Positions 19,961 to 61,810 of a DNA stretch of 64,000 nt are shown piece by piece. The first letter of the stretch is position 1. Every line of letters starts with the position of its first letter. The DNA comes from Oculina patagonica. Lineage: Eukaryota. Position numbers and translations under genes: made by a program. The DNA lies in contig NC_135767.1 of NCBI RefSeq assembly GCF_052425735.1, forward strand, positions 14,818,001-14,882,000, written 5' to 3'. The notes under the pieces were generated by a model, which was not told where the DNA came from, did not search any database, and saw nothing but the letters and a program-made list of their open reading frames with translations.

Positions 19961-20986
19961 TCAGCTTAGAACGATTATCTCTTCGGGATCTTCTCTGTCT
20001 TGCACGATTCTCGATCGCACTCTTTCCTCTTTCTGCGGTCGCCTGCCAGACGAAGCGATGCTAGAAACATCATCCATGCGACTAGACTGCATGGATTGTA
20101 TCACGCTTCCAGATTCCTCTGTGTTCGCTGGAGTGAGACCATTCACAGTAGGTAGCTCGTGTTCTTGTTCTTGTTCTTGTTCTTGATCGTGTGCACAGCA
20201 ATCAAAATTCACTCTGATAAAGCTTGTGACTATGATTAAAAGATTTTTAAAGGCAAATACTGAAGCTCCAGTTTTATATGTATAGTGAAGCACGAGTCGG
20301 ATCACCAGAAATGGGAGGTTAACAACAATCGCCTGCACAAGAATATATACTATATAAATTTTCACTTGTGTCTTATTGCCTTCATCTGTGTTCCTCAGCG
20401 CCTCCCTGACGGGTATTGCAAAGCTAAAAGTTAGAATGACAAGGCTTACAATGGCAAACGCACAAATGCAGTAGTGTATATCCTTCGGTAAAATTTCATT
20501 CTTTCTCGGATCAATGATTGCATCCAAAAGATTTATAATATCAAAGATGTCGACGATAACGGGCCAGTTTAGTTTCATGTGCAGTTTAGGTTCAAATTCT
20601 CCAGCATCTAACAGCATGTACACCAGAACTGTAGCAGATAAAGGATATTTAATGAACCCGTGGTCGAGTCCTGGAGAGTCCACGTTGATCTTAGACATTA
20701 ACGTGCCCAGAATCCACCCGGAATGAATACAAAGCGGTAAGATATATAGAAACCAGACACCAGCCGCCACCTCGCGCTGCCGATAGTTCATCTGTCCCTT
20801 AGCCCAGAGAAGAATCATTGGAACGTAAGTGAGTGTAAACGCTTGAAACGATGAGTTGTTCTCGTATGTAACCAGGTACTGATTAAGCAACAAGACCTGA
20901 ACAAGCAAGATCGAAACGAAGAGGCATCTTCCGACCCACTTGAACAGCACAAGACGGCTGATTTTAAGCTTGACATGTTTATACAT
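19961..20986 (-). CDS. TMEM121/CECR6-family multi-pass membrane protein (single exon, 341 aa)
   Basis: Several hydrophobic helices with the motifs DIFDIINLL, VNLPFLVIRL and FAFKNLL typical of TMEM121/TMEM26-like proteins. Charged C-terminal tail with (EQ)n. Confidence 0.7.
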   Translation of the reverse strand: MYKHVKLKISRLVLFKWVGRCLFVSILLVQVLLLNQYLVTYENNSSFQAFTLTYVPMILLWAKGQMNYRQREVAAGVWFLYILPLCIHSGWILGTLMSKINVDSPGLDHGFIKYPLSATVLVYMLLDAGEFEPKLHMKLNWPVIVDIFDIINLLDAIIDPRKNEILPKDIHYCICAFAIVSLVILTFSFAIPVREALRNTDEGNKTQVKIYIVYILVQAIVVNLPFLVIRLVLHYTYKTGASVFAFKNLLIIVTSFIRVNFDCCAHDQEQEQEQEHELPTVNGLTPANTEESGSVIQSMQSSRMDDVSSIASSGRRPQKEERVRSRIVQDREDPEEIIVLS

Positions 20987-22175
20987 TGTGCCGTGTTTTT
21001 ATAAGAAAGACTGAGCGGTTTAAGGAGATAAACAACGGACCCCTTAACCCAGGATTCATTGCAGCATTCTTATGTAAATACGTGCGTGTCCACTCGATTG
21101 GAAAGATACAGTAGATTCTAAATTAAGATACTTCACTGACAAGCAACAAGAAACACTTGTTGTGATTAACGGTTAAGGTTGATAAAAAGTTTACGTTATC
21201 TGAAGACGAATTGCTGCTAGCTAGTTAATGAGCTCTTCGTCTGGGCAACAGACAAAGGATTAAAGGGGCCGCGAATCTTCGGTGACTGTTTACAATGAAT
21301 AGATTTTTTTATAAAACAAACTGAAACGTCAAAAACATTTATCAAGATATAAAGGCAGCCAAAAAACAGTGAAAGACAAAAGCGGGGGTATGTTCTTGGG
21401 AAACGATTGAAACAGATTGCAAACAAAGATTTTTTTCTTGACGATTCACAGTCGAGAGTCAAATAACCAAAATGTCGAACATCTTTACAAACAGGGTCAG
21501 ATTAGTAGCGCTTCGGCATTTGAAGGATATTGGTTGAATAAACAAATAAAAACCAGTTAAATTTATCAAAAAGCAATATATGGCGCCGCTGTGGATGCTG
21601 TAGAAGCAGAGAAAAACCGACTGTTCAACCCACGATTCCACCTTTACCCACAGCCCCCATCAGCACAATGTTAACAGGTGTGCCCCGGCCCCAGTCCTCT
21701 ACTGCAAAGGAACAAAATGAGCTTTTCAATGTTGAAAAGGTTTTTTTTTTTACGTTGGGACGCTAACGTTGTCACAAGTAGTTTAATGATTCGACGAACA
21801 AATCTTGCGTTTGGTACATGAATCGGCCCAAAGGGTAGTAAGATAGTTGTAAGAAAAGGCACAGGCCAGTAGGTTGTGAAAGGGGAAATAAAAAAAAATA
21901 AATAAATAAAACAAAACAAAACATAAAACATGCGCGACCCGCCGGCGTCTATACAGCAATTTTTTTTCTATTCGGTTTATTGTCCCTTTATTCGATACAT
22001 ATTTAATGTAGGAAAGAAAAGGAAATAAGAAATATATGTTATCGGATGACCTTCAGCCGAGCACTTTTAGACTGGAATCGAGACAGTTTAAGCTAGTAAG
22101 AAGTATAGGTGCTCAACATTGGCTTTTGCATCACGCTGATTTAAGCCCAATAAAACTGGTTTATTCATTTTATTT

Positions 22176-25100
22176 TTAAGATTCTGTAAATGTAACTGAA
22201 GCTACGGAAGTTGTAGTCTCTCTCTGACATTCATCATGGTTCCTCTTCATTAACCACTGCAGGGCGATTTCTAAGAAATGAAAAATGACAACGAACATAG
22301 TTTTTAAAATTAATTGACAGTCTAATTAGAGTTGCATTATAAAAAAAGAGGTTTGCATAATTTATCGTTAGTAGCATAATTATTGCGGTTTTCAGTGAAA
22401 TGCGAACTCTGATATTCAAAATCCAACTAACGATTGCGCCCTAACGACTAACGACAACTAACGATTGACGTTTTCGGCATACTGTATTTCACAGACTGGA
22501 CTGGACTGGACTGGACTAGTAAAACGCGGACTAGTAAAACGCGGACTAGTAAAACGCGGACTTGTAAAACGCGGACTTGTAAAAAGCGGACTTGTAAAAC
22601 GCGGACTAGTAAAACGCGGACTAGTAAAACGCGGACTGGTAAAACTCGGACAGCCAACGAATCATGAAAAAACAGAGACAAACAAAATGGATCGAAATCT
22701 ACCAATCGCAACTGACAGACGTGACCTTTTGACCCGGTTGAAGTGAGCTCCTGTTTCCCGAGAAGTCCACTAAGATGAAAAAAGCGTAAATCGTTGATTG
22801 AAGATTGAACTGCAATAATGTCATTTAACTTCAGAAGGATATGAGAAGACGGGCAACGTTATAAAAATAAACTTAACAGATCAGAAAGCAACTGACACGT
22901 GAACTTACCAATGTTATCATTTTCTTTGCAAGAAATACAATAGCAACTGATGTCTCTACCTTGAATGGAAGACAAATCCCTGCATCAAGGTAGAAGAGTA
23001 TCAATAAGTTACGAGTTAACGTTAACAAAAAAACAAGTTTACACTATATATGGATAGTGAGCACATATCTATATCTAATAAAGCCCTACTATTAGATTTT
23101 TAGGCAATGACGTTAAGTTATCGCCTTATGTTATGGGTCGGTGGATGGGTGCTGTTACGATCACTCCCACCGAGTAGCACTAAGAACTAAGTATTCGGTT
23201 GTTTACTTTTGGTGCGCCAGATCGGTTGGCCATTACTAATTGTCATGAATGTGATCATGAATCGTTTAAAACATGCAGCACGCCATGCCAAGTTTTACCT
23301 TCCACTTAAATGGTCGGCAGGTGGGAGCTAGGGATAAACACTCATTCCTGAAAAAAGTCCGGTCTAAATAATATCAAGGCATGGCTTAATAGAAGGAGAT
23401 GACTTAGGCCTGAACCACGCTATAATAATAATAATAAGAACTTTATTTAAGTGTCTATTCTTCTAGCTAGCCTTAAGCTTACTAATCGGGGACACTGTTT
23501 AAACTAAAATATAATATAAGTACAAAAACGATTCTGGTCTATTTACATTAAATTATGCTACATTTTCCAATACTCTTTGTATTTACATCTAATTCCTACA
23601 ATTAAGATACTACTTTAAAATACGGAATATCGAACCTATATTTAATACTTATAGGGTGGTTTCGGCTCAAGAGTTGCAAAGGTGACACCCTTTGCATGTG
23701 TCTCCTCCGACAAGTCCACTGAGTTCCCTTCCCCTGATGTTCGCCTTGAATCGCTGCAAGGACGTTTCGTTTTTGTCCCTATTGTCTAATTTCGACCACA
23801 TCAATGGCCCAAGGAAACGAAGGGAATGTTTCCCGTACTTGACAGTTCTTACTCTGGGTACGTAAAAATCTGAGTTCCTTAAGCTATAGCTCGAGGGTGA
23901 TCTAGGAAAAAGCTCTACTACGTTGCTAGGAAGTAATCTATGTTTCACTTTAAACATGAAAACTGCGATCTCTTGCAATCGTTTGTTATACAAGCTGGTC
24001 ATCCCCGCGCGTTTTAGGAGGTCACTATAGGAGGAGACCCGATCGCAGAATACTGTACGGAGTCCTCTCTCATTGATCCTCTCCAGTTTCCTTGTGTCGC
24101 TTGCTCGGCAGAAATGCCACACCAAGCTACAGTATGTTAGATGGGGTACTATTGCTGTCTTATAGATCTTCAATTTTGCATGTATGGGGATGAGGTTTTT
24201 CAGCCTTCGCAGGACGCCAATCATTTTGCTAGTCTTCAAGCAAACCTGCGATATAAATTATGTTCCGTAAAGTTAAGGTCTTTGTCGATGATCACGCCCA
24301 ACAGCTTAAATGCATCGGTGATATCAATTTTACTGTTGTTAATTACTAACTCCGTCTGTTGTGTATCTCTCGCTATTATCATCGCTTGGTATTTGCTGTA
24401 ATTGCCCTCCAGGAAGTTTGACTTGTACCAGCTAGATGTCTTTGCCCCATCTTTCTCAACTTCATCCATGGCTGTTCTTAATTCCTTGTTGGAGGAATAT
24501 AGCTGGTGGTCATCAGCATAAGCAGACAGTTGAGATTTTACGCCAGCGTAGAACAGATCATTTTGGTATATGTTCCACAGCAGTGGTCCCAGAGATGATC
24601 CCTGTGGGCAGCCCCGTTTAAGCGCCCCCCAAGCACTAGTAGAGTTACCTACTCTTGTTCTATTTTCTCGATTACTGAAGTACGATTGCATCAGTTTCAG
24701 TGCAGGATCTGATAGCCCGTACGCTTTCAAATAGCCCGTACGCTTTCGATAGCCCGTACGCTTTCAAAGCCCGTACGCTAGCGACATAACGATTTAACGG
24801 CAAGGTCACGCAAATGCAAAAACACCTCAAGTTGATGTTTTATGTGACCAGTGTCATAACAATTAACCTAACGACATAGTTGAAACATAATGACGACTTT
24901 ATGTAAATGTCATTATGTCGTTATGTCGCTGAACCAGGCCTTAATTATACTTAACTACCTGAGAATGACAAACGGTATGTCTTTGAGTAGTTTAAAACAT
25001 TTTTCAAATAGACTGATCTTAAGGAACTTAAAATTAATCGATGTACTATGGTCGAAAAACACAAAAAAGGAAACATTTAACATAGAATTTTACTAAAGAT

Positions 25101-28100
25101 TTTGAAACATCATAATAGGTAAAAGAAGAGGAAAATACAATGTGATCCGTAACATAGTTCTTTAAATTTGTGACACAGTACTTACATTCTTAACACCAGT
25201 TCTCTCTCATCCAACGAATATGGGAGATCCTTTTTGTTTCCTAAAATTAAAACCTACAAAAATTAATCATATTAAAAATTAATCAGCTCGCTAGACAATT
25301 GTTTTAGTTTTGAGGGCTTAATAAAAATACAGGAATGCTCGCAAATTAAATATTGTGGGGAACCAGCTCACTGGTAGTCGAAGCGAACGTCCGAGAATTT
25401 GGACGATTACGTCTTTTATGAACGCGCAGTAGTTATTCTCGAGTAAATTAGCACTGAAGTAGCACTTCATACATTACTTACAGGAATGCCTGCTAATTGC
25501 GGCTTCCCTAACAGTCGATGAAGCTCGTCCCTGGAGATATCTATGTTCCCAACATCTGCAGCGTCCACCATGTACCTACATTGTAGAGAATGAGAATTGT
25601 AAACAAGCCACATGGGTGACGCTTGTAGCCAAGTCAAACATAAAATGATTTTATATCGTACGTACAAGCTAATTTATACCCCAGCTCAACCCCCCCCCCC
25701 CCCCCTTAAGGTTTTAGTTCCATTAAGTCACAGCAAAATTGATTAACATTAGATACAGAGCCCTGTGCTTGTTAAGGTGACACTACGTTATTGGTTTTCA
25801 CGTCATATAACGTAACGAAATCCGCCGTCCTTGACTCGTCATTTTAGATTTCCCTATTTTCTTAGAACGTCATGAAATAACGGACATTGATAGAAAATAA
25901 GGCCATAATGCTAATGTAATATAAAAATACATAAATTTTGTAAATACACTTTAGAATAAAAAAAATGGAAGAAGTATGCCAAAGAAGTTTGATTTAGAAT
26001 ATTATTAATACCTACACTATGCAACTGACGCCTTGACAGAACCCTTCCCACAGCTTTCTAAATCGAGGAGAACCTCCGAGGTCCCAGACCTACTAGTAAC
26101 GAAACCAGAAATGAGATTGAGAAGCATTTAGCAAAAGAGGTGTTTCGCTGGGGTTCCGTACTATCTAGGTGAGGAGATGCACTGTAAGAGTAAAGTGTCA
26201 TGCCCCAATAGCTATTACACTTCAGTAAGAAAGACTATTCGTCATTCTAATAAAGATAAGGGTCTTGTCTTTGAGATTCGCCTCTTTAACTTTGACCTTT
26301 CCTCAATTTTAAACCAATCTATTGTTGATGACCAAAACAAAACAAAAAACAAAAAAACAAAAAGATGAACCAGCCTTGTTTCATTTGGCCCCTTCTTGTC
26401 AACAGGGGATTGGCGTAAAATCGGAGGTCACTGAATAATTACAAAACAGTCACAGACTTTTCGTGGAAGGCGTGGTTGCTATAATAGACCCTATGCATGA
26501 ATGATCATGGTTAAATGGTGCAAAACCGGCCATGCGGTGACGCAAGTTACGCAATGGGAGATTCAGAACAAAGCGACTCGCACTTGTCAAGCTTCACCTT
26601 CCTTTGTTTTGGATGTCCTACTACATAAATATGTCACCGGATATTGCAAAGCGCCTCTTGTTAGCGAACTGGACTCCGGATCGAGCTGTCCGGACTCAAA
26701 CTGTGGCCAGGTCATTATATTGTGTTCTTGGGCAAGCCACTTTACTCTTATAGCCACTGTACTTTCCAACCAGGTGTGTAAATGGGTACTGTTGAATTTA
26801 ACTCTAAAATGCGATTGACTCAAGGATCCCATTCATGCTGGCTATCCCCAGAGGTATGGGACAACCCGGTCTGGAATAAAATTTTAGAACACTATTTATA
26901 ACCATGGAGCACAAAAATGAATAAATGAAAACATTTTCTCTTGTACGTCTCAAAGTTAAACGTAATTAGCATCAATCATCATGATATTGCAGAGCACTTA
27001 AAGGAAAAAAAGTACATACTTTCTTTATTCGGAATGTGTACGCTTATTTTGCTTAATGGGATTAAAAGTTCAAGACTTAAAATAAGAGAGTATTTTTGGC
27101 TGTTTGAAAAAAACAAATTTTAGCATTCAAATGACATCGTAAAGGTTTAAAAAAAAACACATCACATCATGATGTTCCAGATGTATGTTTACCATACCTT
27201 TATAACACCATTTCCATTCGCATACTTTCTCATCTGCCACCCAACTGTAGGAAGCATGTCTTCACTAAACTGATGACCAGACTAAATTAACATAAATGCA
27301 AGTTGTGGTCAAACTTATTACATAAGTATAGTTACCATAGTAACTTTAGCTTTTAGTGGAAATTCGAAAATTTAAAGTGCTAATTTAAAATAAAGCATTT
27401 TCTATGCAAATCCAAGTGTAAAAAACGTATACGAGAATTTGTCATAAGTGAAGGTGGGGTTTAATAAAATACTAAAAAATAAAAAAGGTTAGATTGGAGA
27501 GCTCAGCAGAGACATGGCGCATTCTTGAGAGCGCTCGCCTCTCACCAATGCGACCCGTGTTCGATTACCGGACCGACCCGGCGTTATATGTAGGCTGAGT
27601 TTGTTGTTGGTTCGCCTCCTTGCTCTAAGTGTTTTCTCCTTTCCTGAAAATCAACATTTCCAAATTCCAATTCGACCTGGATAGAGGATCTGCATTAAAA
27701 CCAGCTTGACTAATAGCTGATGTGGGTTTTATAATAACGTTATTCATGACAGGAGCAAAGACAAATTAACTGGTCAAAAATAGTCCAAAAGCCTTATGAA
27801 GGCAGCTTTTTCTAGATCTAGAAATGATGCACTTATGAAATGCCAGGGAATTGTAACGTAAATAAAATAGCTCTTGTTAAATGAACTGGGGTGCCTTTAA
27901 ACGGGGCCGGTTTTGATTCTGTTTCCATAAACATTGCTTAATCTCCCTCACTTCTTATAACTATCAATTTTAGACTTCATCATTTTAGTTTGACATGTCT
28001 TCTCTATGTCCCTCGATAATTTCCACATTTGTCTCATTTGTTTTTCTCTTGAAATTTTCATTTCTACGTTCGGAATCGAAAAAATGCCCTAAGAGATATA

Positions 28101-29124
28101 TTGTAGATGTGTATTTTCAACTTTCCATTTTTTTTATTATTATTATTATAATTATTTTCGTCCAAGTGAACTGGCATTGTCAAGTAACCAACAGCGCTAT
28201 CTTTGCTTCTGCTATCTAATCTGTTGATAAATCTTTCCAGACTAGGCATTAAATACGTGTACATCATTGTTCCTTTTCACCCCCTTGGGAGCATAGGGCG
28301 TCTACCAGTTTCCTAAACTAATATTTTTAAAATAGAAGATCAACCAGGCCGAAACACATTAAAGATCAAAAGCTACATACTCACGGTAAATTGAAAGGCT
28401 ACAGACTGGTAGCCAAAAGCTTATCTTTTCAAAATTCATTTTTTTTAACCAGAGAATGTTTTTAAAACTGTTCAACCAATGTAAACGATGTAGCTGATGA
28501 AACTATTTGAGTAGCCCTGAGCTGCCTTTTTAATGACCTTATAAAAAGGGTTTGTTCGTCGGTAGACGCTGGTAGAAACGAAACCGACTATTTGGTGTTT
28601 AAACGACCCAAAACTTTAACAATACTTTCAAATTTATCATGTTGAAAAACGCTAGTTGAATGTAAGTAAACTTTTTCCCTAATATATTACTACAAAACTC
28701 GTTTTCATTCATTTTCCTTGTGATTGTTTGATGATTTCGTGACCACAGGTCACCTTAAGGCCGGTGACAACATTTCTCGGAATCCGTTATTTATAAAATT
28801 CTCCGAATTTGAAAAATAAAACTTTGCGTCCTCCGGTCTACTGAATAGAACATACCAACAAATCGTCTAAGCCATTGATTACAGACCCATCAGGACTACC
28901 CGTAGAACTGTTAAAAAACGATCCAGTTACGTTGAATGTTAATCGACTCGACCCTAAAAGTTTGAATAAATATAAAGCAGTCATTTAGTAGGTTTACTAA
29001 CCATGATGACATTGAGAAATGTCGTCTTGCCAGACTTTTGCAACCCTACCAACACAACCTTGGTTTCCTCTTTAAAGAATGCATTGTTTATCCAATCAAA
29101 TACACTCCTGTAAAAAGCCAACAT
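22176..29124 (-). CDS. ARL8: ADP-ribosylation factor-like 8 (ARL8)-like small GTPase, divergent paralog, 202 aa
   Basis: Exons 29124-29002, 27281-27198, 26089-26016, 25575-25482, 25253-25186, 22979-22909 and 22270-22176, all GT-AG, total 609 nt. Translation includes [90 protein letters not shown] lies just after the stop. Confidence 0.9.
22498..22647. repeat. 15-bp minisatellite (GGACTAGTAAAACGC) x9 preceded by (GGACT)n
   Basis: Direct reading. Lies in intron 6 of the ARL8-like gene. Confidence 0.9.
23407..24940. mobile_element. Harbinger-like MITE split by the LINE insertion
   Basis: Left end tta-ggcctgaaccacgcta, continuing after the LINE as gcgacataac; right end ttatgtcgctgaaccaggcc-tta. 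Confidence 0.65.
23423..24774 (-). mobile_element. 5'-truncated CR1/L2-type LINE (RT C-terminal half)
   Basis: RT motifs [17 protein letters not shown] and LGVIID. Frameshift near 24255. (TTA)n 3' tail at ~23423-23437. ACGCTA target duplication. Confidence 0.9.
26465..26830 (+). mobile_element. tRNA-derived SINE with a small MITE-like insert in its head
   Basis: ggaaggcgtgg...gttagcgaactggactccggatcgag head and a tgtgttcttgggcaag..ccaggtgtgtaaatgggtact core. Interrupted at ~26483-26650 by an aatagaccc...tgcaaagcgcctct insert. Confidence 0.5.
27496..27700 (+). mobile_element. tRNA-derived SINE
   Basis: Degenerate A box (tggcgcattc), B box (gttcgattacc), and the gagtttgttgttggttc...ttccaaattccaattcgacc body seen in cnidarian SINEs. 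Confidence 0.6.
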
Positions 29125-31076
29125 TTTCTATCTGAATGCACACGAATAACTGACTACCGTTCAACACAGGAAGCAATAACTTTTTACATCCCGAGATATT
29201 CCATGCGCATGCTCTGCGAACGGGAGAGCCTGGACCCTGAAAATTAATCAGAACTGAAAGAGACCAGGTTAACACATAACACATTACACGGTTCAAAGAT
29301 TCGAGAAAACAATTTTTGATCTTTATTCAACCCACTTTTTGGATCAAATAATCTGACAGTTTGTTAGCGAAACGAATTACCTTGTATTACATTTTTGTTT
29401 ATTACCCGTTGTAAGATGTATACAATACAAACCCCCGAAAGCAAACGTTGACGCTCGAACCAGCTCTTGGAACACACGTAGCCAAGAACACGAAACCAAT
29501 TGCTCGAAATCTTTCGACGTATTACTAACAACTGCTTCAAATATCACTTAAAGCAGAGAAACCGCTCGAACAAATCTGTGAACACGCGTAAACCAAAACC
29601 GGAAAACGAAATGCTGCTAGAAGATGGCGAAGCTCGAAGGTGACGCAACGCGACCTCATGGTTGCAAGTACCCGACACCACCGTGCGCGCTTGCTAAAAT
29701 ATTACCCGAGACGACCGTGCGCGCCTAGTTTTGTCAAATCGAGAACGCTCCGCCCATTACAAACACATTTCTTACTTTTTCAACAAACATTCTTTGTCCT
29801 TGTATGTATACACGCGGGGACTCCTAGGGTGCCTCCTCGGGTTTTGGCAACAACGATGTAAACACGTCAGCCGAATTGGTCTATAAAAGCATTCTTTATC
29901 TTTGAATAGTTTTCAACTCTGACATTCAAATAGATAATACCTATAGGTTTACAGCGTTGGAAATACCAAATTAAGATATCTTGTAGTTGAAAAAGAAAAT
30001 GCTGATGTACTCCTATCCATTTCAAATGTAGAATAGCAGGTGGCATATACGGATGGGATGACAGCTCAAAAACGTTTTACATGATAATTCCTGCATGTGC
30101 GTAATAATGCAAGCAGTTTTCCTAAACTATAAGCTTTCCATAATACGGCAAATAAAGTTGCACTGCGTTTTATCTATACATTAACCTTCCTTTCCTTTTC
30201 TCCCCTCTCTCCAGAGTCATTTCCATGGCTGGACCCTTGCATGTCTACGATGACTTTAAATTTCGTCTTCCAAAAATTCAATGGTAACGATTTTCCTTTG
30301 AATTAGAGATTTCTCAGAAGCATATATTCTTCTCATCTCCACAGTACAAAAAAAAAAACATGTTTCTAACTATCTAGCACAAATTACCAATACAATTATT
30401 CTTAGCGTTAATTCGATCATAATGCCATGTTTATCGGATAAACATTTCCCTTTCTGCTTCCTTAACCTTACTTCGTAGATTCATTAAATAAGGCAAACAT
30501 GATGAGGCATTATTTAAATATCGAAATTGTGACGCAAAATAAAATTTGACGTTCTGAGTCATTTGAATGGCAAGTTAATTTATTTTTACGCTTAAATAAT
30601 TCAGAAAAAAAAAAAAAAAAAAAAAAACAGAAAATAACATGTTCAACTACTGATATTTTTGCCCTACTAAAAATCCCTATTTTTATAGATGATATCAGTT
30701 GTAATGAATGATCGGGAAGGTGGTAGAAACTAATACAATATAACTGCATTTATATCATGACAAAGCAAAATTAAACAAAAATATATTAAAGGAAGTCTTT
30801 TCCCTGCAGTCGCATTAAAGTAACACTAATATTTAACAAGTAGCCTAATCTAAATGTTTAAAGGCTAACTACTAATTGCCTAAAACAACTTCTTAAGTAA
30901 GCTGAGGTTTAAAAAAACTTTAAAGGTGAACATGTCAGTGAATTTAGATATCGAATGACGCTTAAGATTCCATCTAGTGTAGGCAACTCCAAATGGGAAT
31001 GCAAATTAGACTACACTGTGTGGATTCACCTGTGTATTATATTTGTTGTATCTGTTGTATCACCACAAATTACACA

Positions 31077-32012
31077 ATGGCTGCGAATTTTACTGAAGAT
31101 GAAAGCCAGGGAACGTTTGAAGATCTGATTTGTTCCACATCACTGGATGAGCCACACGCCTTGCGATTCATCGCAGCCGTAAACATTTTCCTGTCCGTCG
31201 CCACATCTCTGGGAAATACTCTAATTATTGTTGCTCTTCAAAAGGAGTCTTCGCTCCACCCGCCTTCGAAACTGTTGTACATTTGCCTCTCGGCCACCGA
31301 TCTATGCGTTGGTTTAATTCTGCAGCCTACCTATGTGATCATTTTAATATCTGAGATAAATGGAGACAAAGAACTCTGCTATCGCATTGCAACCTCAAAT
31401 GTAGTTATAGGCGTTATCGTAAATGGCGTGTCGTTGTCAACTCTAACCGCTATAAGTGTGGACAGACTTCTCGCCCTGTTATTAAGGCTGAGGTACCGAC
31501 AAATTGTAACTTTAAAACGAACCCGTGTGGTTGTAGCCATGATTTGGTTATTGCACATTTCTGTTGCCATCACGTACTTCTGGGTCCAACTGTTTTTCCT
31601 ATGGTTCGGCTACTTACTAATATCTGTTTGTATTATAACATCAGTTGTATCATACGCGAAAATTTACTTCAATCTCCGCCGTAAAATGGCACAAATCCTT
31701 AACCAAGGGCAGGCTTATGCAGGAGGAACTCAAATGAACATAGCACTATACAGAAAGACTGTTTCAACCGCATTGTGGATTCAGCTGACATTAGTGGCTT
31801 GTTTTCTTCCATATGGCATATACACAGCTCTCATTCCAAAGTTTGGATCATCCCCATCATTTGTTCTAGGCGGGAGGTTTGTATCAAGCTTAGTCTTCTT
31901 AAACTCATCTCTAAACCCATTTTTGTACTGTTGGAAGATGAGGGAAGTACGACAAGCAGTGAAGGAAACAATCAGACAGTTTTGGTGCTTCTCTAATGAA
32001 AGTGCTGATTAA
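31077..32012 (+). CDS. Intronless class A GPCR (adenosine/melanocortin-receptor-like orphan)
   Basis: 7TM motifs GN (TM1), LSATD, SVDRL and NSSLNPFLY. The likely ATG is 31077, from comparison with the paralog at 35880. Confidence 0.9.
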   Translation: MAANFTEDESQGTFEDLICSTSLDEPHALRFIAAVNIFLSVATSLGNTLIIVALQKESSLHPPSKLLYICLSATDLCVGLILQPTYVIILISEINGDKELCYRIATSNVVIGVIVNGVSLSTLTAISVDRLLALLLRLRYRQIVTLKRTRVVVAMIWLLHISVAITYFWVQLFFLWFGYLLISVCIITSVVSYAKIYFNLRRKMAQILNQGQAYAGGTQMNIALYRKTVSTALWIQLTLVACFLPYGIYTALIPKFGSSPSFVLGGRFVSSLVFLNSSLNPFLYCWKMREVRQAVKETIRQFWCFSNESAD

Positions 32013-35879: not shown

Positions 35880-36818
35880 ATGGCTGCGAGTTTTACTGAA
35901 GATGGAAGCCAGGGAACGTTTGAAAACCTTGTTTGTTCGTTGGATGCGCCACACGCCTTGCGATTCATCGCAGCTGTTAATATTTTCCTATCAGTCGCCA
36001 CTTCTCTGGGAAATACTCTAATCATTGTTGCTCTTCAAAAGGAGTCTTCGCTTCACCCGCCATCGAAACTGTTGTATATTTGCCTCTCGGCCACCGATCT
36101 ATGTGTTGGTTTAATTCTGCAGCCTTTTTATGTGATCATTTTAATATCTGAGATAAATGGAGACAAAGAGCTTTGTTATCACGTCTCAACCTACTTTGCT
36201 GTTATAGGTGCTATCTTGTTTGGCGTGTCGTTGTCAACTCTAACCGCTATAAGTGTGGACAGACTTCTCGCCCTGTTATTAATGTTGAGGTACCGACAAG
36301 TTGTAACTTTAAAACGAATCCGTGTAGTTGTAGCCATGATTTGGTTTTTGTTCATTTCTGTTGCCACAACGTACTTCTGGGTCCAATTGTTTTTACTGTG
36401 GTTTGGCTATATACTAATAACTGTTTGTATTATAACATCAGTTTTCTCATACACGAAAATTTACTTTAATCTTCGCCGTCAAATGGCTCAAATCCTAAAC
36501 CATGCTAGCCAAGGGCAGGCTCATGGAGGAGGAACTCAACTGAACATAGCACTATACAAAAAGACTGTTTCCACTGCATTGTGGATTCAGCTCACATTAG
36601 TGGCTTGTTTTCTTCTCTATGGCATATACACAGCTCTAATTCCGAAGTATGGATCACCCCCCTCATTTGTTCTAGGTGGGAGGTTTGTATCAAGCTTAGT
36701 CTTCTTAAACTCATCTCTTAACCCATTTTTGTACTGTTGGAAGATGAGGGAAGTACGACAAGGGGTGAAGGACACGATCAGACAGTTTTGGTGCTTCTCT
36801 AATGGAAGTGCTGATTAA
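35880..36818 (+). CDS. Intronless class A GPCR, recent paralog of 31077
   Basis: 312-aa ORF with the same 7TM motifs and high identity to the 31077 copy. Confidence 0.9.
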   Translation: MAASFTEDGSQGTFENLVCSLDAPHALRFIAAVNIFLSVATSLGNTLIIVALQKESSLHPPSKLLYICLSATDLCVGLILQPFYVIILISEINGDKELCYHVSTYFAVIGAILFGVSLSTLTAISVDRLLALLLMLRYRQVVTLKRIRVVVAMIWFLFISVATTYFWVQLFLLWFGYILITVCIITSVFSYTKIYFNLRRQMAQILNHASQGQAHGGGTQLNIALYKKTVSTALWIQLTLVACFLLYGIYTALIPKYGSPPSFVLGGRFVSSLVFLNSSLNPFLYCWKMREVRQGVKDTIRQFWCFSNGSAD

Positions 36819-41823: not shown

Positions 41824-44800
41824 ATGTTTCTTTGTCTGGTCGCCGTTCTGTCCTTGAGTATGTCCGTCCTCGCGCAGGATCTGTTCACGTCTCCCTTGGA
41901 CGAAGTAAGGAACACGTTACTGACTTATTCTACTGGTTCCTCGACGGCGCCGACAGTAACACCAACGACATATAAGAAGCCGGCGTATAATTGGGGTTTG
42001 TAAAGCTTATTAATCTTAATGATCTTCCAGGTTCCTTAAATTAAACCTTTCTATTTCTTTAAAAAGCGCAATCGAAATAAACACGGCATTGCTTAAAAGG
42101 CGTACCATACATAACGCCATAGTCGGCAAGACAAGGAAAACAAGTTACAGCAATTTTAAGCTACATATTTATTCGAAGCCTACAACATCGATTAACTGGA
42201 TATTGAAGGTCGGCATTTGGAACCAATCAGTCGCTCAGCAGCATGGACCAATATTATCTAACTCAGTTCAAACTCATCCTTTTTTCGCATTGTATTGATG
42301 ATGATAAGTAAAAAATATATATATATGAAAAACTTGTGATTGATGGATCCTTAACACTACATTTCTCACCGACCAAATTGAAAATGTGTTGCACATGAGG
42401 CATTACTGTTTAAATTTGCTTTATAGGGCGCTTATCCTCTGCCAAACTTAACAGTCAGTGACGAATCATTTGTTTCTGATTATTTTATAAGTAATTTTTT
42501 CAGGAAATGCTGTTATGCCCGCTTCGGTTGACATATCAGTTTCGTCCTGCGGCTCAAGCCAAATCTCGGCAAACCCTACGACACCCCCAAAGCCAAAGCC
42601 TACAAAGCCTTCCAATAAATTCCTCGGAGCTGTCGATGAAATTGAGAAAGCCCTCTACGAAGCCCAGGCTGCTGGAAATCGCTACAGCCATACGGACGCC
42701 AAATTGCAGAGAATCAAGAAAAGCATTAAACTCGCTGCTCAAGAGCGAAGCTATCAGTTTTTTCGTCAATCCCTTGGCCACGGTCTGTTCACTGCAATGG
42801 TACTAGACAAAAAGGCAGGTCGTAAAAAGCGAACACCAACCAACCAAGTGAAGAAGTTTATGGATTCCATCAAAACGGAATTAGGCGATTCAGTATTCGA
42901 TACTTTCATGGGTGTTCATGGGGATGTCACACTGATGTTCGCTATCGATGATACTGGAAGCATGAGTGGCGAAATTCAAGCAGCTAAGGACATCGCAACC
43001 TCAATTGTAAATCATCAAAGAAATGGGGCAGTCGACTTCATCCTGTCTCCCTTCAATGATCCAGGTAGCATAAAATATCGTACCGTATTGTTTCCCTCTT
43101 CCCACCTTTCCCTTACTTTCCTCTTTTCCCTTCGGCTGTCCCCTTCCCACTTTCCCATACCCATTCCCTTTCCTTCTATGCACTTTCCTCCCTCTCTCCC
43201 GCACCCCTTTCCTCCCTGCACGTCCTTCCCCTATTCCCCCTTTTCCCTTCCAATGTCACCTTTCCCCTTCCCTATCTGCACTCCCTTTTCCCTCCCCCGC
43301 TCTTCCTCTCTTGTCCCCCTTTTCCCTTTTACTCTCCCCTTCCACCTTCCCTCTCTGAACCTTCTTTGTCCTCTCGTGTTCTTTCCCTCTTCCCTTCTTC
43401 CCCTTTTCCTCTCTTTTCTTTTTCCCAGTTCATACTTCCCAATTTTTCTTACGTTTTTTTTTTTTTACCTTTCCCCCCTCCTTTTCTTTAAATCGCCCCC
43501 TTTCTCCTTGCTTTCTTCCTAAATTCCCCATCTCTCTTTCGTCCTTACATTGTCTCCCTATTTTCAGTTTTCTCACTACCACTTCCCCATTCACTTTATT
43601 ATATATATCCGTCTATCAGCCTTTCGCCTTCCTGCCTCATTTCCCTTCATGCCCTCTTTCCAACATTTCTTGTTTCTCATTTCAGTTTCTCTGTATTCCT
43701 TCTACCTTTCCCTTCTCCTACTTTTATTCCTCCACTTTTCCCCCCTCCACCTTCCTTTATCCGTCCCCGCCCTTCCCCTTCCCTCTTTTTTCTTCTCTCT
43801 TTTTTACCTTTTTCTGTTATTGTGTTTGCCAGATCTTTACCCCTCTCTCCTCTTCCCTGACCATCCCCTATATCTTGTCTCCTTTTTCTTCCCTATTTTT
43901 CATCCCACCTTCCCCTTTCCTCTTCCCGTTCCCGATTTTTCCTTCTCACAATCCCTTCTTCTTTTATTTTCTATTCGCTTCATTTCCCACGCTTTCCCTC
44001 TTACCTTCTTCCACACTCCCCAATACTTTTCCCCTTCCCTCTGTCACCTTTCTTATTATTCCTTCTCTCCAGCATCCCCATATCTTCATCTCATCTTTTC
44101 CTTTTTCATATTTACCATCTCCCCCCTATTTTGCTCGATGTCCTTCTTCTTTAATTTTTCTATATACTTTTTCCAACATTCCATTTGACCTCCTCTTTCC
44201 CTGATCCCCTTTTCCTTCTCCCCTTCCAATTATTTCTTGCTATCTACCTCTCCATTTTACGTCCTTTTTATTTCGGAATCAACGCTTTCCTTTCTGCCTT
44301 TTTCTCGTTTTAACTGCTGCTGTTTTATTGTCCAAACAGGTACAGGGCCAGTGGTTTATAGGGATCCTAGTCAGGGTGGCCAGTTCGTCAGAGACATCAA
44401 TGCTCTAAGAGCACATGCTGGAGGCGACTGTCCAGAGTTAACTTTTACAGGGATCCTAGATGCCATGAATTTTGGTCCTCTGCCAGGTTCACCGCTCTAT
44501 GTCTTCACTGATGCTTCAGCAAAAGATGCTTCTAACGAAAACTTCATGGATGCTGTTTCATTTGCCCGTGCAATGGGGCTGACAATAAACTTCTTCACTA
44601 CGGGAAACTTGTGTGGAAACCCATCTTTCAAGTCCTTTGAAGATCTTGCTAGAGAAACCTGCGGTCAAATGCTACGTCTTCCATCCAGCGATGACCTGAA
44701 GAAACTCTCAACTATAACTGGGATCTCGCTAACCGGCACAACGTGCCTTTGCAGTGGAGGAGATAACAGTGCAAGTGGCAAAAAGAAGAGGAGTGCTACC

Positions 44801-46035
44801 AAAGAGTATGAAATCCCTCTTGACGATTCAATCGAAAAGGTTATTGTCACAGTTACTACGCAGAACACAGGTCCGAACATCATCTTAAAGGATCCCTCAG
44901 GGAACACTTTTTCCTCGGGAAAGGTTCCTTTTCCTCAGGGGGCGTTGTACGAGATCAATAACCCTATGCCTGGGTCGTGGAAATTGGTTATCTCCGGAGC
45001 AGGAAAGCACACATACCTGGTTAAAGGATCCAGCAAGACAAACGTTGACTTTGACTTTTTCTTCGTCATGATTCCAAGCTACGGAACAAATAAAAAGCCG
45101 ATACCTATTTCCCAGCCGCTGCTTGGTAAGTACTGAAACTACCATTTCGTTTCCCTACGTTCCTAACGATGCCCCTTCTCCTGCAAAATAAGCAATCTCA
45201 CATATTTTTCTGCCCCTTTTAGAAAGAAAACGTTAACGAAAAGTCTGTCACTATTTCATCAGCTTCAGAATTCCACTCACAATAGGAGGCAAACACCTAT
45301 ACATCTCAGGATATACACACCACTACTTTTTCCGTTCTTGTCTTGTCAGAAACTCTCGCTACCGTTAGCACTAATTTCATTCCTTTTTTTTTAGAAGTGA
45401 CAAAAAAGTAAAATCCAATAGCTTACCATCGTTTTATTTCATTTTATTTATTTACATTTTTCTAAGGTGAGACTGCACGGGTTATCTTGATAGTCACAGA
45501 AGCCGATAAACTCGATGCAATGTCTCTTGACGTTGACCTCCTGAGCAAAGATGGAAATTCCCTTGGTAAGGCCTCTGCTAAACCTGTTGGGACAAGTGGC
45601 GCCCATTTCTCGGCTTCTTTCACTCCACCTTTAGTGCCTTTCCGACTTGTACTTAAAGGAAAAACAAAGAAAGGAAACAAATTTGAGCGCAGTTCCCACA
45701 GTATCGTCACTCCAAGCAACGTTTTGATCCGAGTGTTGTACGCAAAAGAGGAATACACAGTTCCAGCGAAAGGAAATGGATACGTAATGTTTATTGTCTA
45801 CAACAATGGCCCAAGCGAAGTCTTTGATGTCAATGTCAAGGATACTGAGAAGTTCAAAGCAAGCCTCCTCCGCCCCACCATCACAGTTCGTAAGGGGCGA
45901 ACAAGTTTCTTCTCCGTCAGCTTTACAGCCAAAAGTCCAGCCACCCCTGGCGGTACCGATGCAGTGCTAGTTACTGTCACTGGAAAAACATCTAAAGTCA
46001 CTGCTGCTCATGTTGTGACTTTAATGGTCGCTTAA
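41824..46035 (+). CDS. VWA7-like secreted protein, gene B (4 exons, ~695 aa)
   Basis: Exons 41824-41995, 42504-43064, 44340-45125 and 45467-46035, phase-1 GT-AG introns, 2088 nt in frame. The last two introns are at the same positions as in gene A. Signal peptide MFLCLVAVLSLSMSVLA; motifs FAIDDTGSM, GGDCPE and VFTDA. Confidence 0.88.
43090..44310 (+). repeat. Low-complexity polypyrimidine tract filling intron 2 of gene B
   Basis: About 1.2 kb dominated by C/T on the plus strand, with no fixed period. Confidence 0.9.
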
Positions 46036-49684: not shown

Positions 49685-50602
49685 ATGTTGGACTTTGCCA
49701 TAGATGGAAACTACACAAGCAGGCTGAACGAAACAAGCACATCAACAATAGGCCGACCTCGCCATGCGTTTATTTCCGCCTTGAACATATTTCTAGCCAT
49801 CACCGCGTCAGTAGGAAATTCTATTATAATTATTGCTCTTCATAAAGTGACCACCCTTCATCCACCTACAAAACTTTTGTTTCGATGCCTGGCGGTCACT
49901 GATCTTTGCGTTGGCCTTATTACGCAACCACTCTATGCTATCGCTGTTATGCCACAAGGAGCAATGAATAGGGATATTTTAAAATATTTCATTACAGGAA
50001 ATTATGTTTCAAGCTATATGCTGTGTGGGGTATCCGCCTTAATATCGACCGCAATAAGCGTGGACAGACTTCTCGCCCTGTTGCTACGAATGAGATACAG
50101 GAACGTTGTAACATTGAGACGAGTTCGTGCAGTTGTGATATGTTGTTGGTTAATCGGTGTTTCATGTGGATTAATGTACCTTTGGAGCATTACCTTAACC
50201 TGGATCGTTGTATTTATATTTCTAATGCTTTGCCTTGTAATCTCAATCTTCTCATACGCGAAGATTTACCTCAAACTACGTCAACATCAGAACCAAATAC
50301 AAGAACATGTTCACCAAGGACAACCGAACGGAGGGGAAATTCCACTGAATATAGCACGATACAAGAAGACAGTTTCTAGCATAGCATGGGTGCAGTTGAC
50401 ATTAGTTGCATGTTATGTCCCGTATGGTATCGAGTCTTTATTGTGGATTAGAGGAATAGATACGTACAATTCTTGGTTGTCAACAGCAACTCTAGTCTAC
50501 TTAAACTCGTCTCTTAATCCAATTCTTTATTGTTGGAAGATGAGAGAAGTGAGGCAGACCGTGAAGGACACAATCGGACAGTTTTGTTGTTTTTCAAGCT
50601 AA
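49685..50602 (+). CDS. Intronless class A GPCR
   Basis: 305-aa ORF with GNS, LAVTD, SVDRL and NSSLNPILY. Confidence 0.9.
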   Translation: MLDFAIDGNYTSRLNETSTSTIGRPRHAFISALNIFLAITASVGNSIIIIALHKVTTLHPPTKLLFRCLAVTDLCVGLITQPLYAIAVMPQGAMNRDILKYFITGNYVSSYMLCGVSALISTAISVDRLLALLLRMRYRNVVTLRRVRAVVICCWLIGVSCGLMYLWSITLTWIVVFIFLMLCLVISIFSYAKIYLKLRQHQNQIQEHVHQGQPNGGEIPLNIARYKKTVSSIAWVQLTLVACYVPYGIESLLWIRGIDTYNSWLSTATLVYLNSSLNPILYCWKMREVRQTVKDTIGQFCCFSS

Positions 50603-60924: not shown

Positions 60925-61810
60925 ATGGCGAATGTTACTGAAGACGGAAACTTCACAAGCGCGCAAAACCAAACAAGCACGCCAATATGGCATACAGGCG
61001 TATTTGCTTTCCTTTCAGCCTTAAACATTTTCCTATCCATCACCGCATCACTGGGCAATGCTCTGATTCTTGTTGCTCTTTATAAAGAGACTTCTATGTA
61101 CCCCCCGACCAAACTTTTTTTCCGATGTCTGGCAATCACTGAATTTTCCGTTGGCCTTATTTCCCAGCCGCTATTTTCTGTGTATCTTACGTCATCCATA
61201 ACAACTGGGATGAACTCGAATATCGAACAGTACATCAGTGCCGTTAATGGCCTTTCGAGTTTCACTTTGTGCGAAGTATCAGTCTTCACATCCACCGCAA
61301 TAAGCGTAGACAGATTCCTCGCCCTTTTGAAGGGGCTGAGATATAAGCACGTTGTAACATTAAGGCGAGTTCGGGCAGTAATAAATTGCTTTTGGTTTAT
61401 CGAATGTATTGATGTACTTTTGGAACATAAGGATTGCCATAACTGTAGGCGTTACCCTTATGACATTTTTCTAGCAACATCAGTGGTTTTTTTCACGAAG
61501 ATTTATCTCAAGCTTCAACATCATCAACTTCAAGTGCAAGTCCCCGAAGGACGATATGCACGATACAAGAAATCAGTTTCCAGTGTATTGTGGGTACAGA
61601 TTGTATTAGTTAGTTGTTATGTACCATTCATTGTAGCTGTTATGATGGAGATATACGGCAGAATGTTTGGAAATAAGCTTCATATCGTTTTTCGCCTAAT
61701 ATAAACCCTTACCTACCTAAATTCGTCTTTAAACCCGATTCTTTACTGCTGGAGGATCAGAACAATACGACAAGCAGCGAAGGACACGATTAAACAATAA
61801 ACTGCTGCAA
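60925..61810 (+). pseudogene. GPCR pseudogene
   Basis: Normal TM1-3 (SVDRF). TM4/5 scrambled by compensating frameshifts (~61400-61470). Premature TAA at 61702 precedes [19 protein letters not shown], with a further stop at ~61798. Confidence 0.8.

What the first reader, a model, noticed from the sequence alone, without database searches (positions are those of the whole stretch)
22176..29124. Intact ARL8 paralog with catalytic Gln replaced by Ser (WDLGGS): candidate naturally GTP-locked lysosomal GTPase
Seen: seven exons splice to an open 202-aa ORF. The G3 motif reads DLGGS (TCT at 26069-26071) instead of DIGGQ, while the P-loop (GLQKSGKT) and NKxD are intact. Switch I/II are altered (TVGWQMRK versus TVGFNMRK; LWEGFC versus MWERYC) and there is a Ser/Thr-rich C-terminal extension. 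Known: ARL8 is extremely conserved across animals and its Q75L mutant is hydrolysis-deficient; ARL8 controls lysosome motility and phagolysosome fusion via HOPS/SKIP. Inference: a neofunctionalised paralog with altered effectors, possibly relevant to phagosome or symbiosome handling if the host is a symbiotic cnidarian.
Basis: partly seen in the sequence, partly recalled or inferred. Interest (0 to 1): 0.75.

Follow-up and report, generated by a model that had tools for sequence, protein, structure and literature searches.

The report
Conserved coral ARL8 paralog lacking catalytic glutamine
The coral Oculina patagonica carries, beside its normal lysosomal GTPase gene ARL8, an expressed second copy in which the catalytic glutamine is a serine; the copy, with that serine, is kept in at least two other related genomes, so it is a real specialised switch protein, but whether it is stuck "on" is untested.

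Summary
Seven minus-strand exons (29124..22176), all with AG/GT splice sites, give a 609-nt CDS and a 202-aa protein. It is identical to NCBI's automatic model "ADP-ribosylation factor-like protein 8 [Oculina patagonica]". The G3 motif is DLGGS (TCT at 26071..26069).

The canonical ARL8 (DIGGQ) lies 2 Mb away on the same chromosome, with the same six intron positions.

RNA-like contigs from two studies (a third weakly) cover the exons only, and one joins exon 7 to exon 4, so the gene is expressed and spliced.

I found orthologous loci in four other sequence lineages of unknown species. In both lineages where exon 3 is available it reads DIGGS. One locus keeps the flanking GPCR and TMEM121-like genes.

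dN/dS among orthologs is 0.11-0.24, at dS up to 0.85. This rules out a sequencing error and neutral decay.

Twenty-seven sites that are near-invariant in animal ARL8 are replaced in the paralog. They cluster in strand β1, switch I/interswitch and G3/switch II.

"GTP-locked" stays an inference. The known ARL8B GAP (TBC1D9B) has its own Arg and Gln fingers, so hydrolysis may not need the cis glutamine.

No evidence links the gene to symbiosis.

Verdict: a new variant of a known kind, of moderate interest.

The parts
29002..29124 (-). Exon 1 (codons 1-41): start ATG at 29124, N-terminal amphipathic helix [20 protein letters not shown], strand β1 KVVLVG, P-loop GLQKSGKT
   Evidence: The PDB alignment to human ARL8A covers residues 1-40. 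Orthologous exon 1 is present in L041/L042, L043 and L045.
27198..27281 (-). Exon 2: switch I and interswitch ([28 protein letters not shown]). F>W and N>Q relative to canonical FNMRK, plus a one-residue insertion.
   Evidence: RNA contig depth falls on the exon only.
26016..26089 (-). Exon 3: G3 and switch II ([25 protein letters not shown]). Ser76 codon TCT at 26069-26071.
   Evidence: The orthologs L043 and L045/L046 read [25 protein letters not shown], also with TCT.
25482..25575 (-). Exon 4: helix α3 region ([31 protein letters not shown])
   Evidence: Record 15 of run X5 matches 25480-25572 with no differences and joins it to exon 7.
25186..25253 (-). Exon 5: G4 motif ([22 protein letters not shown])
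22909..22979 (-). Exon 6: G5 motif ([23 protein letters not shown]). 22919 A>C (N168K) is seen in three other runs.
22176..22270 (-). Exon 7: C-terminal helix (IALQWLMKR), a Ser/Thr-rich tail about 17 residues longer than canonical ARL8, and the stop TAA at 22178-22176
   Evidence: RNA contigs end their match exactly at 22270 (X2 record 7 and X5 record 15). The extension has the same length in L043.
   Evidence: X5 record 15 has 199 letters before the position that matches 22152.
23670..24730 (-). Fragment of a non-LTR retrotransposon reverse transcriptase inside intron 5. It is a passenger, not part of the gene product.
   Evidence: Pfam RVT_1, E = 2.4e-12. Read depth is multi-copy.

Best explanation
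This is a functional, lineage-restricted paralog of the lysosomal Arf-like GTPase ARL8. I call it ARL8X here.

Origin. It arose by DNA-level duplication of the canonical gene: all six intron positions are the same, and the two genes lie on the same chromosome 2 Mb apart. The duplication happened before several related lineages separated. These are presumably stony corals, but their species are unknown. The copy then changed rapidly on the surfaces a small GTPase uses to talk to regulators and effectors: strand β1, switch I, the interswitch, G3 and switch II. One of these changes is the catalytic Gln becoming Ser. Since then purifying selection has held that new state.

Shown. The gene is intact, spliced and expressed. 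Ser76 and about 25 other ARL8X-specific residues are conserved between orthologs. dN/dS is about 0.1-0.24.

Inferred. All nucleotide-binding motifs are intact (GxxxxGKT, the switch I Thr, DxGG, NKxD, SCK), so it should still bind guanine nucleotide. In O. patagonica it should anchor to membranes through its ARL8-type N-terminal amphipathic helix. Without the cis glutamine, and with a changed switch face, it most likely hydrolyses GTP poorly and/or escapes the canonical ARL8 GAP. It would then act as a long-lived 'on' form, controlled mainly by expression, GEF loading or membrane recruitment, and with an effector set that differs from canonical ARL8.

My odds: gene real, expressed and selectively maintained, about 0.9. 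Hydrolysis impaired, about 0.5.
For: Gene model, and identity to NCBI protein P0186 of Oculina patagonica.

ARL8 affinity. Human ARL8A/B score 241-257 bits in the PDB against at most 92.5 for any other Arf-family chain. The top five fold matches are ARL8A/B (on a weak model).

Canonical copy. It has DIGGQ and identical intron phases at C10:16.84 Mb.

Expression. Runs X2 and X5 have depth on every exon bin and zero depth on unique intron bins, which the DNA run X16 covers at about 70x. A 943-nt contig joins exon 7 to exon 4.

Orthologs. L043 has all seven exons, DIGGS, and the same flanking GPCR and TMEM121-like genes. L045/L046 have exons 1-4 and DIGGS. L041/L042 hold exon 1. L044 holds exons 2, 4 and 5.

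Selection. NG86 dN/dS is 0.217 for Oculina vs L043 (dS 0.72; Fisher p = 1e-12), 0.114 for L043 vs L045, and 0.197 for Oculina vs L045. The ML codon model gives omega 0.237. The flanking genes give dS 0.81-0.89 and omega 0.11-0.22 for the same species pair.

Phylogeny. The ARL8X clade has 100/100 support on a stem of 0.6 substitutions per site inside animal ARL8.

Divergent sites. There are 27 sites where at least 90% of 16 animal ARL8 share a residue that no ARL8X has. Among them are F56W, N57Q, Q76S, S81K, R85G, Y86F and R88Q.

Precedent. [quoted passage not shown] ARL8B Q75L is the standard GTP-locked form (PMC12992710).
Against: No biochemical data exist.

ARL8B alone is nearly inactive in vitro. 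Its GAP TBC1D9B was inactivated by mutating its Arg and Gln fingers. If these fingers act in trans, as in other TBC GAPs, Ser76 need not block GAP-stimulated hydrolysis.

Some orthologs show oddities. In L043 the exon-5 donor is AT. In L045/L046 the exon-3 acceptor is TG. L044 is a contig in which exon 3 is skipped. L043 and L045 lack residues 2-7 of the N-terminal helix. One run of a near relative shows W56S and V54I.

No full-length ortholog appears among annotated proteomes in the 5.8-billion-protein collection, so the taxonomic range is unknown.

The tree cannot say when the duplication happened.
Confidence: 0.6

Rival explanations
1. ARL8X is a normally cycling switch with new partners. 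It still goes through GTP/GDP cycles because its GAP supplies the catalytic residues in trans, by a TBC-type dual Arg/Gln finger or a Rap-type Asn thumb. In that case Ser76 and the other switch changes retune which GEF, GAP and effectors recognise it, rather than locking it on.
For: TBC1D9B stimulates ARL8B hydrolysis, and mutating its own R559, Y592 and Q594 abolishes this. ARL8B alone is nearly inactive. TBC1D9B tells ARL8B from ARL8A despite more than 90% identity, so a few surface changes are enough to switch regulator specificity (PMC12992710). The 27 conserved ARL8X-specific substitutions lie largely on the switch and interswitch face.
Against: Q75L is used as GTP-locked ARL8B in cells, which suggests the cis glutamine matters in vivo. 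Rab24, which lacks the conserved glutamine in its catalytic domain, is reported to be mostly GTP-bound. No coral GAP has been examined.
Confidence: 0.3
2. ARL8X is a decaying duplicate. It is expressed but on its way to becoming a pseudogene, and the Q>S change is simply a loss-of-function lesion.
For: Two orthologs have non-canonical splice sites. One contig skips exon 3, which shifts the frame. One clade has a truncated N-terminus. A near relative shows W56S. The gene is missing from the annotated proteomes searched.
Against: The exon reading frames are open in every ortholog locus recovered; O. patagonica and L043 have all seven exons open, at dS 0.72 for this gene and 0.81-0.89 for its neighbours. 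omega is 0.11-0.24, like the neighbouring functional genes. Exon 3 is identical in amino acids between L043 and L045, with only synonymous differences. All G motifs are intact. Spliced transcripts occur at even depth across exons 2-7.
Confidence: 0.05
3. The Ser codon is an assembly or sequencing error, or the gene model is an artefact.
For: None found.
Against: The same TCT codon occurs in three independent assemblies of three sequence lineages. NCBI's model is identical to mine. RNA contigs respect the exon boundaries.
Confidence: 0.01

Closest known systems
Canonical ARL8 (human ARL8A/ARL8B; O. patagonica ARL8 at C10:16.84 Mb, P0008:53-237)
   Same: 66% identity to the same genome's ARL8 and 63-65% to human ARL8A/B. 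All six intron positions match. Shared ARL8-specific marks: P-loop Gln (GLQ), Phe before RxxW, switch II Cys, and GNKKD without the Arf Ala/Gln. In O. patagonica the N-terminal amphipathic helix starts Met-Leu, as in ARL8.
   Different: The catalytic Gln is Ser. The Asn of the interswitch N-[VI/M] motif is Gln. The ARL8 [ED]-x-[TS] motif in strand β1 is K-V-V. The aromatic residues are swapped (F>W, Y>F). There is one inserted residue before switch I and a C-terminal tail about 17 residues longer. It evolves far faster: 71% identity between two ARL8X orthologs, against 98% between Oculina and Montipora canonical ARL8.
Engineered ARL8B Q75L (the 'GTP-locked' mutant used in cell biology)
   Same: The same position is changed, and the cis glutamine is lost.
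   Different: Q75L is a laboratory point mutant in an otherwise canonical protein. ARL8X is natural, has Ser rather than Leu, and carries about 26 further conserved substitutions. Its nucleotide state is unmeasured.
Rab24, an atypical Rab that lacks the conserved catalytic glutamine
   Same: It is a natural small GTPase without the G3 glutamine, reported to have weak or no GTPase activity and to be mostly GTP-bound. It acts in the endolysosomal and autophagy system (PMC12385749).
   Different: It belongs to a different family (Rab, not Arf-like), is anchored by prenylation, and is old and widespread in vertebrates. There is no homology beyond the G domain.
Arl18, the ancient sister paralog of Arl8 (Vargová et al. 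2021, PMC8358228)
   Same: It is a second Arl8-like GTPase that exists beside Arl8 in some eukaryotes.
   Different: Arl18 is reported to be absent from metazoans and to have a different exon-intron structure from Arl8. ARL8X shares Arl8's introns and nests inside animal ARL8. I did not compare Arl18 sequences directly.

Membership tests
ARL8 subfamily of Arf-like GTPases | Best sequence and fold match is to ARL8, not to other Arf/Arl proteins | tested here: met
   ARL8A/B score 241-257 bits against at most 92.5 bits for ARL3, ARF6 and ARF1. The top five Foldseek hits are ARL8A/B (model pLDDT is only 63).
ARL8 subfamily of Arf-like GTPases | P-loop Gln in place of the Arf/Arl/Sar Asp (GLQxSGKT) (Neuwald 2010, PMC3012027) | tested here: met
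   GLQKSGKT in O. patagonica, and GLQ[KR]SGKT in the orthologs.
ARL8 subfamily of Arf-like GTPases | Switch II Cys replacing the second aromatic residue of Y-[YF], and Phe before the R-x-x-W motif | tested here: met
   [11 protein letters not shown]. Phe79 and Cys87 are kept, and Tyr>Phe at position 86.
ARL8 subfamily of Arf-like GTPases | NKxD context lacks the Arf Ala and Gln (GNK[KR]D) | tested here: met
   LGNKKD.
ARL8 subfamily of Arf-like GTPases | [ED]-x-[TS] motif in strand β1 instead of the Ras-like [RK]-x-[LIV] | tested here: not met
   Canonical ARL8 has E-L-T. ARL8X has K-V-V (K-V-A or K-I-V in orthologs), which reverts to the Ras-like pattern.
ARL8 subfamily of Arf-like GTPases | Asn of the interswitch N-[VI/M] motif (FNMRK) | tested here: not met
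   WQMRK or WQMK in every ARL8X sequence that covers exon 2 (O. patagonica, L043, L044, L045).
ARL8 subfamily of Arf-like GTPases | Catalytic Gln in G3 (WDxGGQ) | tested here: not met
   Ser (TCT) in O. patagonica, L043 and L045/L046. It is Gln in 16 of 16 animal ARL8 sampled.
ARL8 subfamily of Arf-like GTPases | Descent from ARL8: shared gene structure | tested here: met
   All six introns are at the same codon positions and phases as the canonical copy in the same genome.
ARL8 subfamily of Arf-like GTPases | Lysosomal localisation, BORC-dependent activation, and binding of SKIP, PLEKHM1, HOPS and RUFY | not testable with these tools
   The N-terminal helix is ARL8-like in O. patagonica, by sequence only. 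Residues 2-7 are missing in L043 and L045.
Naturally GTPase-deficient ('GTP-locked') small GTPases | Catalytic glutamine replaced while nucleotide-binding motifs are kept | tested here: met
   The G1, G2, G4 and G5 motifs and DxGG are intact, with Gln>Ser.
Naturally GTPase-deficient ('GTP-locked') small GTPases | Measured low intrinsic and GAP-stimulated hydrolysis, and a predominantly GTP-bound state in cells | not testable with these tools
   Inference only. The finger-bearing TBC GAP of ARL8B makes it uncertain.
Pseudogene or decaying duplicate | Stops or frameshifts, omega near 1, no spliced transcript | tested here: not met
   Open frame over all seven exons in O. patagonica and L043, and open exons in every other ortholog locus. 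omega is 0.11-0.24. Spliced RNA contigs exist.

The most novel reading that the evidence does not exclude
ARL8X is a constitutively GTP-bound, GAP-insensitive ARL8 derivative that a group of corals evolved to hold a subset of lysosome-related compartments in a fixed state. These could be phagosomes or symbiont-bearing vacuoles in a facultatively symbiotic host such as Oculina. The state could be arrested fusion or fixed positioning. If so, it would be a natural version of the Q75L mutant with its own effector set.
Probability: 0.07. Interest if true: 0.8.

Novelty: new variant of a known kind. Interest (0 to 1): 0.52.

Why it matters
ARL8 is among the most conserved trafficking GTPases. Coral and vertebrate proteins are 85-89% identical. 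Its catalytic Gln was invariant in all 16 animal sequences I compared.

ARL8X is a duplicate that has replaced that Gln and rebuilt the switch and interswitch face, and purifying selection has kept the result across deep divergence (dS about 0.7-0.9). That makes it a natural experiment on three questions:
- What does the cis glutamine do in ARL8, now that a TBC-type GAP has been found?
- Which surface residues set GEF, GAP and effector specificity?
- How can a lysosomal switch be re-purposed?

It is also a ready-made candidate for coral cell biologists who study lysosome, phagosome and symbiosome handling, although nothing here ties it to symbiosis.

Tried and rejected
- **Single-exon queries.** Pfam on single exons gave only sub-threshold Arf hits. 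The whole-genome Arf scan did not list the window's own exons.
- **Representative-library search.** With exon 1 as query it returned mostly ORF fragments. It was useful only for P0001 and P0008.
- **First staggered exon alignment (A1).** MAFFT misplaced exons 6 and 7, so I rebuilt it as A2.
- **Full-length orthologs.** Searching 5.8 billion proteins with P0186 found none between 68% and 100% identity. Annotated coral proteomes seem to lack it or to have missed it.
- **Naming the ortholog species.** Cluster look-ups to name the species of L041-L046 returned no names.
- **Tree.** The placement of ARL8X within animal ARL8 is unresolved, so the duplication cannot be dated.
- **AlphaFold2.** A 30-sequence alignment gave only pLDDT 63. 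I used the model for a fold check only and draw no structural conclusions from it.
- **Literature.** I found no open paper on the ARL8B-RUN interface (8JC5), so effector-contact residues could not be mapped. There is no paper on ARL8 in cnidarian symbiosis and none on coral ARL8 paralogs.
- **Typing the spliced protein.** I did not type the 202-aa spliced protein into any tool. All searches used exon references until P0186 supplied an id.
- **Read evidence.** Its variant table was truncated, so the absence of a listed variant at the Ser codon is weak on its own.
- **Rejected readings.** Retrocopy (introns are present), sequencing error, and pseudogene.
Full report
**1. The observation**

I translated the minus strand of 22100-29200 and anchored splice sites. 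This gives seven exons: 29124-29002, 27281-27198, 26089-26016, 25575-25482, 25253-25186, 22979-22909 and 22270-22176. Every internal boundary is AG...GT. The CDS is 609 nt and the protein 202 aa.

G3 reads WDLGGS, with TCT at 26071..26069. The P-loop is GLQKSGKT, G4 is GNKKD and G5 is SCK. The C-terminus runs about 17 residues past the end of canonical ARL8 and is Ser/Thr-rich.

**2. Identity of the genome and the gene**

The window is G000:C10:14,818,001-14,882,000 of a 529-Mb assembly.

I built a staggered alignment of the exon translations on a canonical ARL8 scaffold and used it as a profile query. This returned a 202-aa protein, P0186, on a contig of exactly C10's length (23,458,249 bases). 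NCBI names it "ADP-ribosylation factor-like protein 8 [Oculina patagonica]". It is identical to my model.

So the gene model is already in an automatic annotation. I found no paper that mentions the Gln>Ser change.

**3. Relation to the canonical gene**

Exon searches of the genome found one other ARL8 locus, at C10:16.836-16.840 Mb, plus a copy on the small contig C343 that is probably a haplotig. I reconstructed it. It encodes a textbook ARL8 with DIGGQPRFRSMWERYC and TVGFNMRK, and it is 98% identical to Montipora ARL8.

All six introns sit at the same codons and phases as in the window gene. ARL8X is therefore a DNA-level duplicate, not a retrocopy. The two are 66% identical, with dS 1.09, which is saturated.

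Against the PDB, ARL8X matches human ARL8A/B at 241-257 bits. Every other Arf-family chain scores 92.5 bits or less.

**4. Expression**

Four runs were laid on 22150-28149.

- Runs X2 and X5, from two studies and two organism labels, have depth in every bin that holds an exon. The X2 depths fit a single transcript at roughly 40-48x.
- The same two runs have zero depth in unique intronic bins: 24950-25149, 26350-26549, 26950-27149 and 27750-27949. The DNA-like run X16 covers three of these bins (about 72x, 20x and 78x) and has none at 27750-27949.
- A 943-nt X5 contig matches exon 7 up to exactly 22270 and then exon 4.
- A 689-nt X2 contig also stops matching exactly at 22270.
- X6 has only weak exon signal.

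All these runs are stored as assembled contigs. They show that a spliced transcript exists, but not how abundant it is. Exon 1 was outside the 6-kb limit.

Exonic differences seen in the runs:

| Position | Change | Effect | Runs |
|---|---|---|---|
| 22919 | A>C | N168K | three runs |
| 27252 | A>T | synonymous | three runs |
| 27245 | C>T | V54I | X5 only |
| 27238 | C>G | W56S | X5 only |

The effects were worked out. No difference at the Ser codon was listed, but the table was truncated.

**5. Orthologs**

- **L041/L042.** The representative-library search with exon 1 found an 89-aa ORF fragment, P0001. It is 85% identical over exon 1 and lies on two short Logan contigs. Against the window exon it shows 10 synonymous and 7 mostly conservative non-synonymous codon differences.
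- **L043.** A search with residues 42-131 of P0186 found exon-4 fragments P0331 and P0332. P0331 lies on a 1.05-Mb ENA contig (L043). That locus contains all seven exons in the same order and phases. Exon 3 reads [25 protein letters not shown], and the Ser codon is again TCT. Its neighbours are a rhodopsin-type GPCR upstream on the opposite strand and a CECR6/TMEM121-family gene downstream on the same strand. The window has the same arrangement, so L043 is the positional ortholog.
- **L045/L046.** A degenerate DNA pattern for W-D-[LIM][11 protein letters not shown] found two 99.5%-identical metagenome contigs of a further lineage. They hold exons 1-4, DIGGS and the same upstream GPCR. The pattern required Ser, so this scan could not have found a Gln-bearing ortholog.
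- **L044.** This contig joins exons 2, 4 and 5 while keeping parts of introns 1 and 5. Exon 3 is skipped, which shifts the frame. It looks like a partly processed transcript.

I could not name any of these species.

**6. Selection**

| Comparison | dN/dS (NG86) | dS |
|---|---|---|
| O. patagonica vs L043, 196 codons | 0.217 | 0.72 |
| L043 vs L045, exons 1-4 | 0.114 | 0.33 |
| O. patagonica vs L045, exons 1-4 | 0.197 | 0.85 |

- For the first comparison dN is 0.156, and Fisher's test on the site counts gives p = 1e-12.
- A GY94+F3X4 model on the three orthologs gives omega 0.237.
- As a yardstick, the flanking genes between the same two genomes give dS 0.81-0.89, with omega 0.11 for the TMEM121-like gene and 0.20-0.22 for the GPCRs.
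- Exon 3 differs between L043 and L045 only at synonymous positions.

The gene is therefore constrained, though far less tightly than canonical ARL8.

**7. Where the changes are**

Sixteen animal ARL8 sequences, from sponge, ctenophore, cnidarians and bilaterians, were compared with the ARL8X sequences. At 27 sites at least 90% of the canonical proteins share a residue that no ARL8X has. At most of these sites the ARL8X orthologs agree with one another.

The sites cluster in four places:

- the end of the N-terminal helix and strand β1 (9-24)
- switch I and the interswitch (51-67, including F56W and N57Q)
- G3 and switch II (Q76S, S81K, R85G, Y86F, R88Q)
- G5 and helix α5 (159-183)

I checked ARL8X against Neuwald's list of ARL8-specific features (PMC3012027). 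It keeps the P-loop Gln, the Phe before RxxW, the switch II Cys and the GNKKD context. It has lost the [ED]-x-[TS] motif (now K-V-V) and the Asn of the interswitch motif.

In a protein tree the two full-length ARL8X sequences form a 100/100 clade on a long stem (0.6) inside animal ARL8. The attachment point is unresolved.

**8. Mechanism**

*Shown:* an intact nucleotide-binding scaffold and a conserved Ser at the catalytic position.

*Established knowledge:* ARL8B Q75L is used as the GTP-locked form (PMC12992710, PMC4432227). [quoted passage not shown]

*Complication:* a 2026 paper identifies TBC1D9B as an ARL8B GAP. It was inactivated by mutating its Arg and Gln fingers. It finds ARL8B alone nearly inactive. 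It also finds that TBC1D9B does not bind ARL8A despite more than 90% identity. From my own knowledge of TBC GAPs, the glutamine finger acts in trans.

Two readings therefore remain open:

- ARL8X hydrolyses poorly and stays on. I prefer this reading, at about 0.5.
- ARL8X still cycles with a GAP that supplies the chemistry, and the substitutions mainly retune partner specificity (about 0.3).

Either way the remodelled switch face predicts partners different from canonical ARL8.

**9. Oddities that temper the picture**

- L043 has AT instead of GT at the exon-5 donor.
- L045 and L046 both have TG instead of AG at the exon-3 acceptor.
- L044 skips exon 3.
- L043 and L045 start MCF... and lack residues 2-7 of the amphipathic helix. 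The Cys at position 2 could be a lipidation site, but that is speculation. Vargová et al. note N-terminal Cys palmitoylation in other Arf-family members.
- L046 differs from L045 by G27S in the P-loop.
- X5 shows W56S.

Given the low omega, I read these as lineage-specific variation, or possibly regulated inclusion of exon 3, rather than decay. They deserve raw-read checks.

**10. Symbiosis**

Nothing in the data bears on phagosomes or symbiosomes. The idea rests only on the host being a facultatively symbiotic coral.

**Verdict**

ARL8X is a new, conserved variant of a known GTPase family, and its nucleotide cycle is untested.

Noticed in passing
window 30993-32012 (+), 35880-36818 (+), ~49769-50599 (+), 53017-53832 (-), ~61009-61797 (+): A cluster of intronless rhodopsin-type GPCR paralogs (Pfam 7tm_1) flanks ARL8X. 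The nearest one is syntenic with the GPCR next to the ortholog in L043 and L045. The two nearest copies show omega about 0.2 between species.
   Followed up: partly
window 19961-20986 (-): An intronless CECR6/TMEM121-family ORF of 341 aa lies directly downstream of ARL8X. It is 84% identical to its counterpart in L043 (dS 0.87, omega 0.11).
   Followed up: partly
window 23670-24730 (-), inside intron 5: A fragment of a non-LTR retrotransposon reverse transcriptase (RVT_1, with a YADD motif), split over two frames. Read depth is multi-copy.
   Followed up: partly
window 22513-22651 (intron 6), 24711-24779, 26550-26750, 27550-27750: A 15-bp tandem repeat (GGACTAGTAAAACGC, 9.3 copies), an 18/37-bp repeat, and two short interspersed repeats. 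The repeat-bearing bins at 22350-22749, 26550-26749 and 27550-27749 reach depths of hundreds to thousands in the three RNA-like runs and about 10^5 or more in the DNA run; 24711-24779 is lower.
   Followed up: no
window 42515-45136 (+): Three consecutive ORFs with VWA_4 and hemicentin-type galactose-binding domains, in a stretch with very strong GC skew (-0.43). They are probably exons or a frame-broken copy of a large extracellular protein gene.
   Followed up: no
G000:C10:16,835,800-16,840,434 (L040/L039) and C343:31,000-35,604: The canonical ARL8 gene. NCBI flags it as a 'LOW QUALITY PROTEIN' with a 52-residue spurious N-terminal extension. An identical copy sits on the small contig C343 and is probably an uncollapsed haplotig.
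   Followed up: partly
L045:4875-4877 and L046:4929-4931; L043:10865-10866: ARL8X orthologs have non-canonical splice sites. The exon-3 acceptor is TG in two independent contigs of one lineage. The exon-5 donor is AT in L043. The coding exons are otherwise intact and constrained.
   Followed up: partly
L044:184-432: A JGI contig joins ARL8X exons 2, 4 and 5 directly, skips exon 3 (which shifts the frame), and keeps intron 1 and intron 5 sequence. It looks like a partly processed, exon-3-skipped transcript of a further lineage.
   Followed up: partly
window 27238, 27245, 22919: Run X5 (organism B) shows W56S and V54I in switch I, at a Trp conserved in all other ARL8X sequences. N168K is seen in three runs, so the reference allele may be the minor one.
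   Followed up: partly
L043:6201-6215; L045:3012-3026: In two lineages ARL8X starts MCF[DH]W and lacks residues 2-7 of the ARL8-type amphipathic helix, which puts a Cys at position 2. L046 also differs from L045 by G27S at the first P-loop glycine.
   Followed up: no
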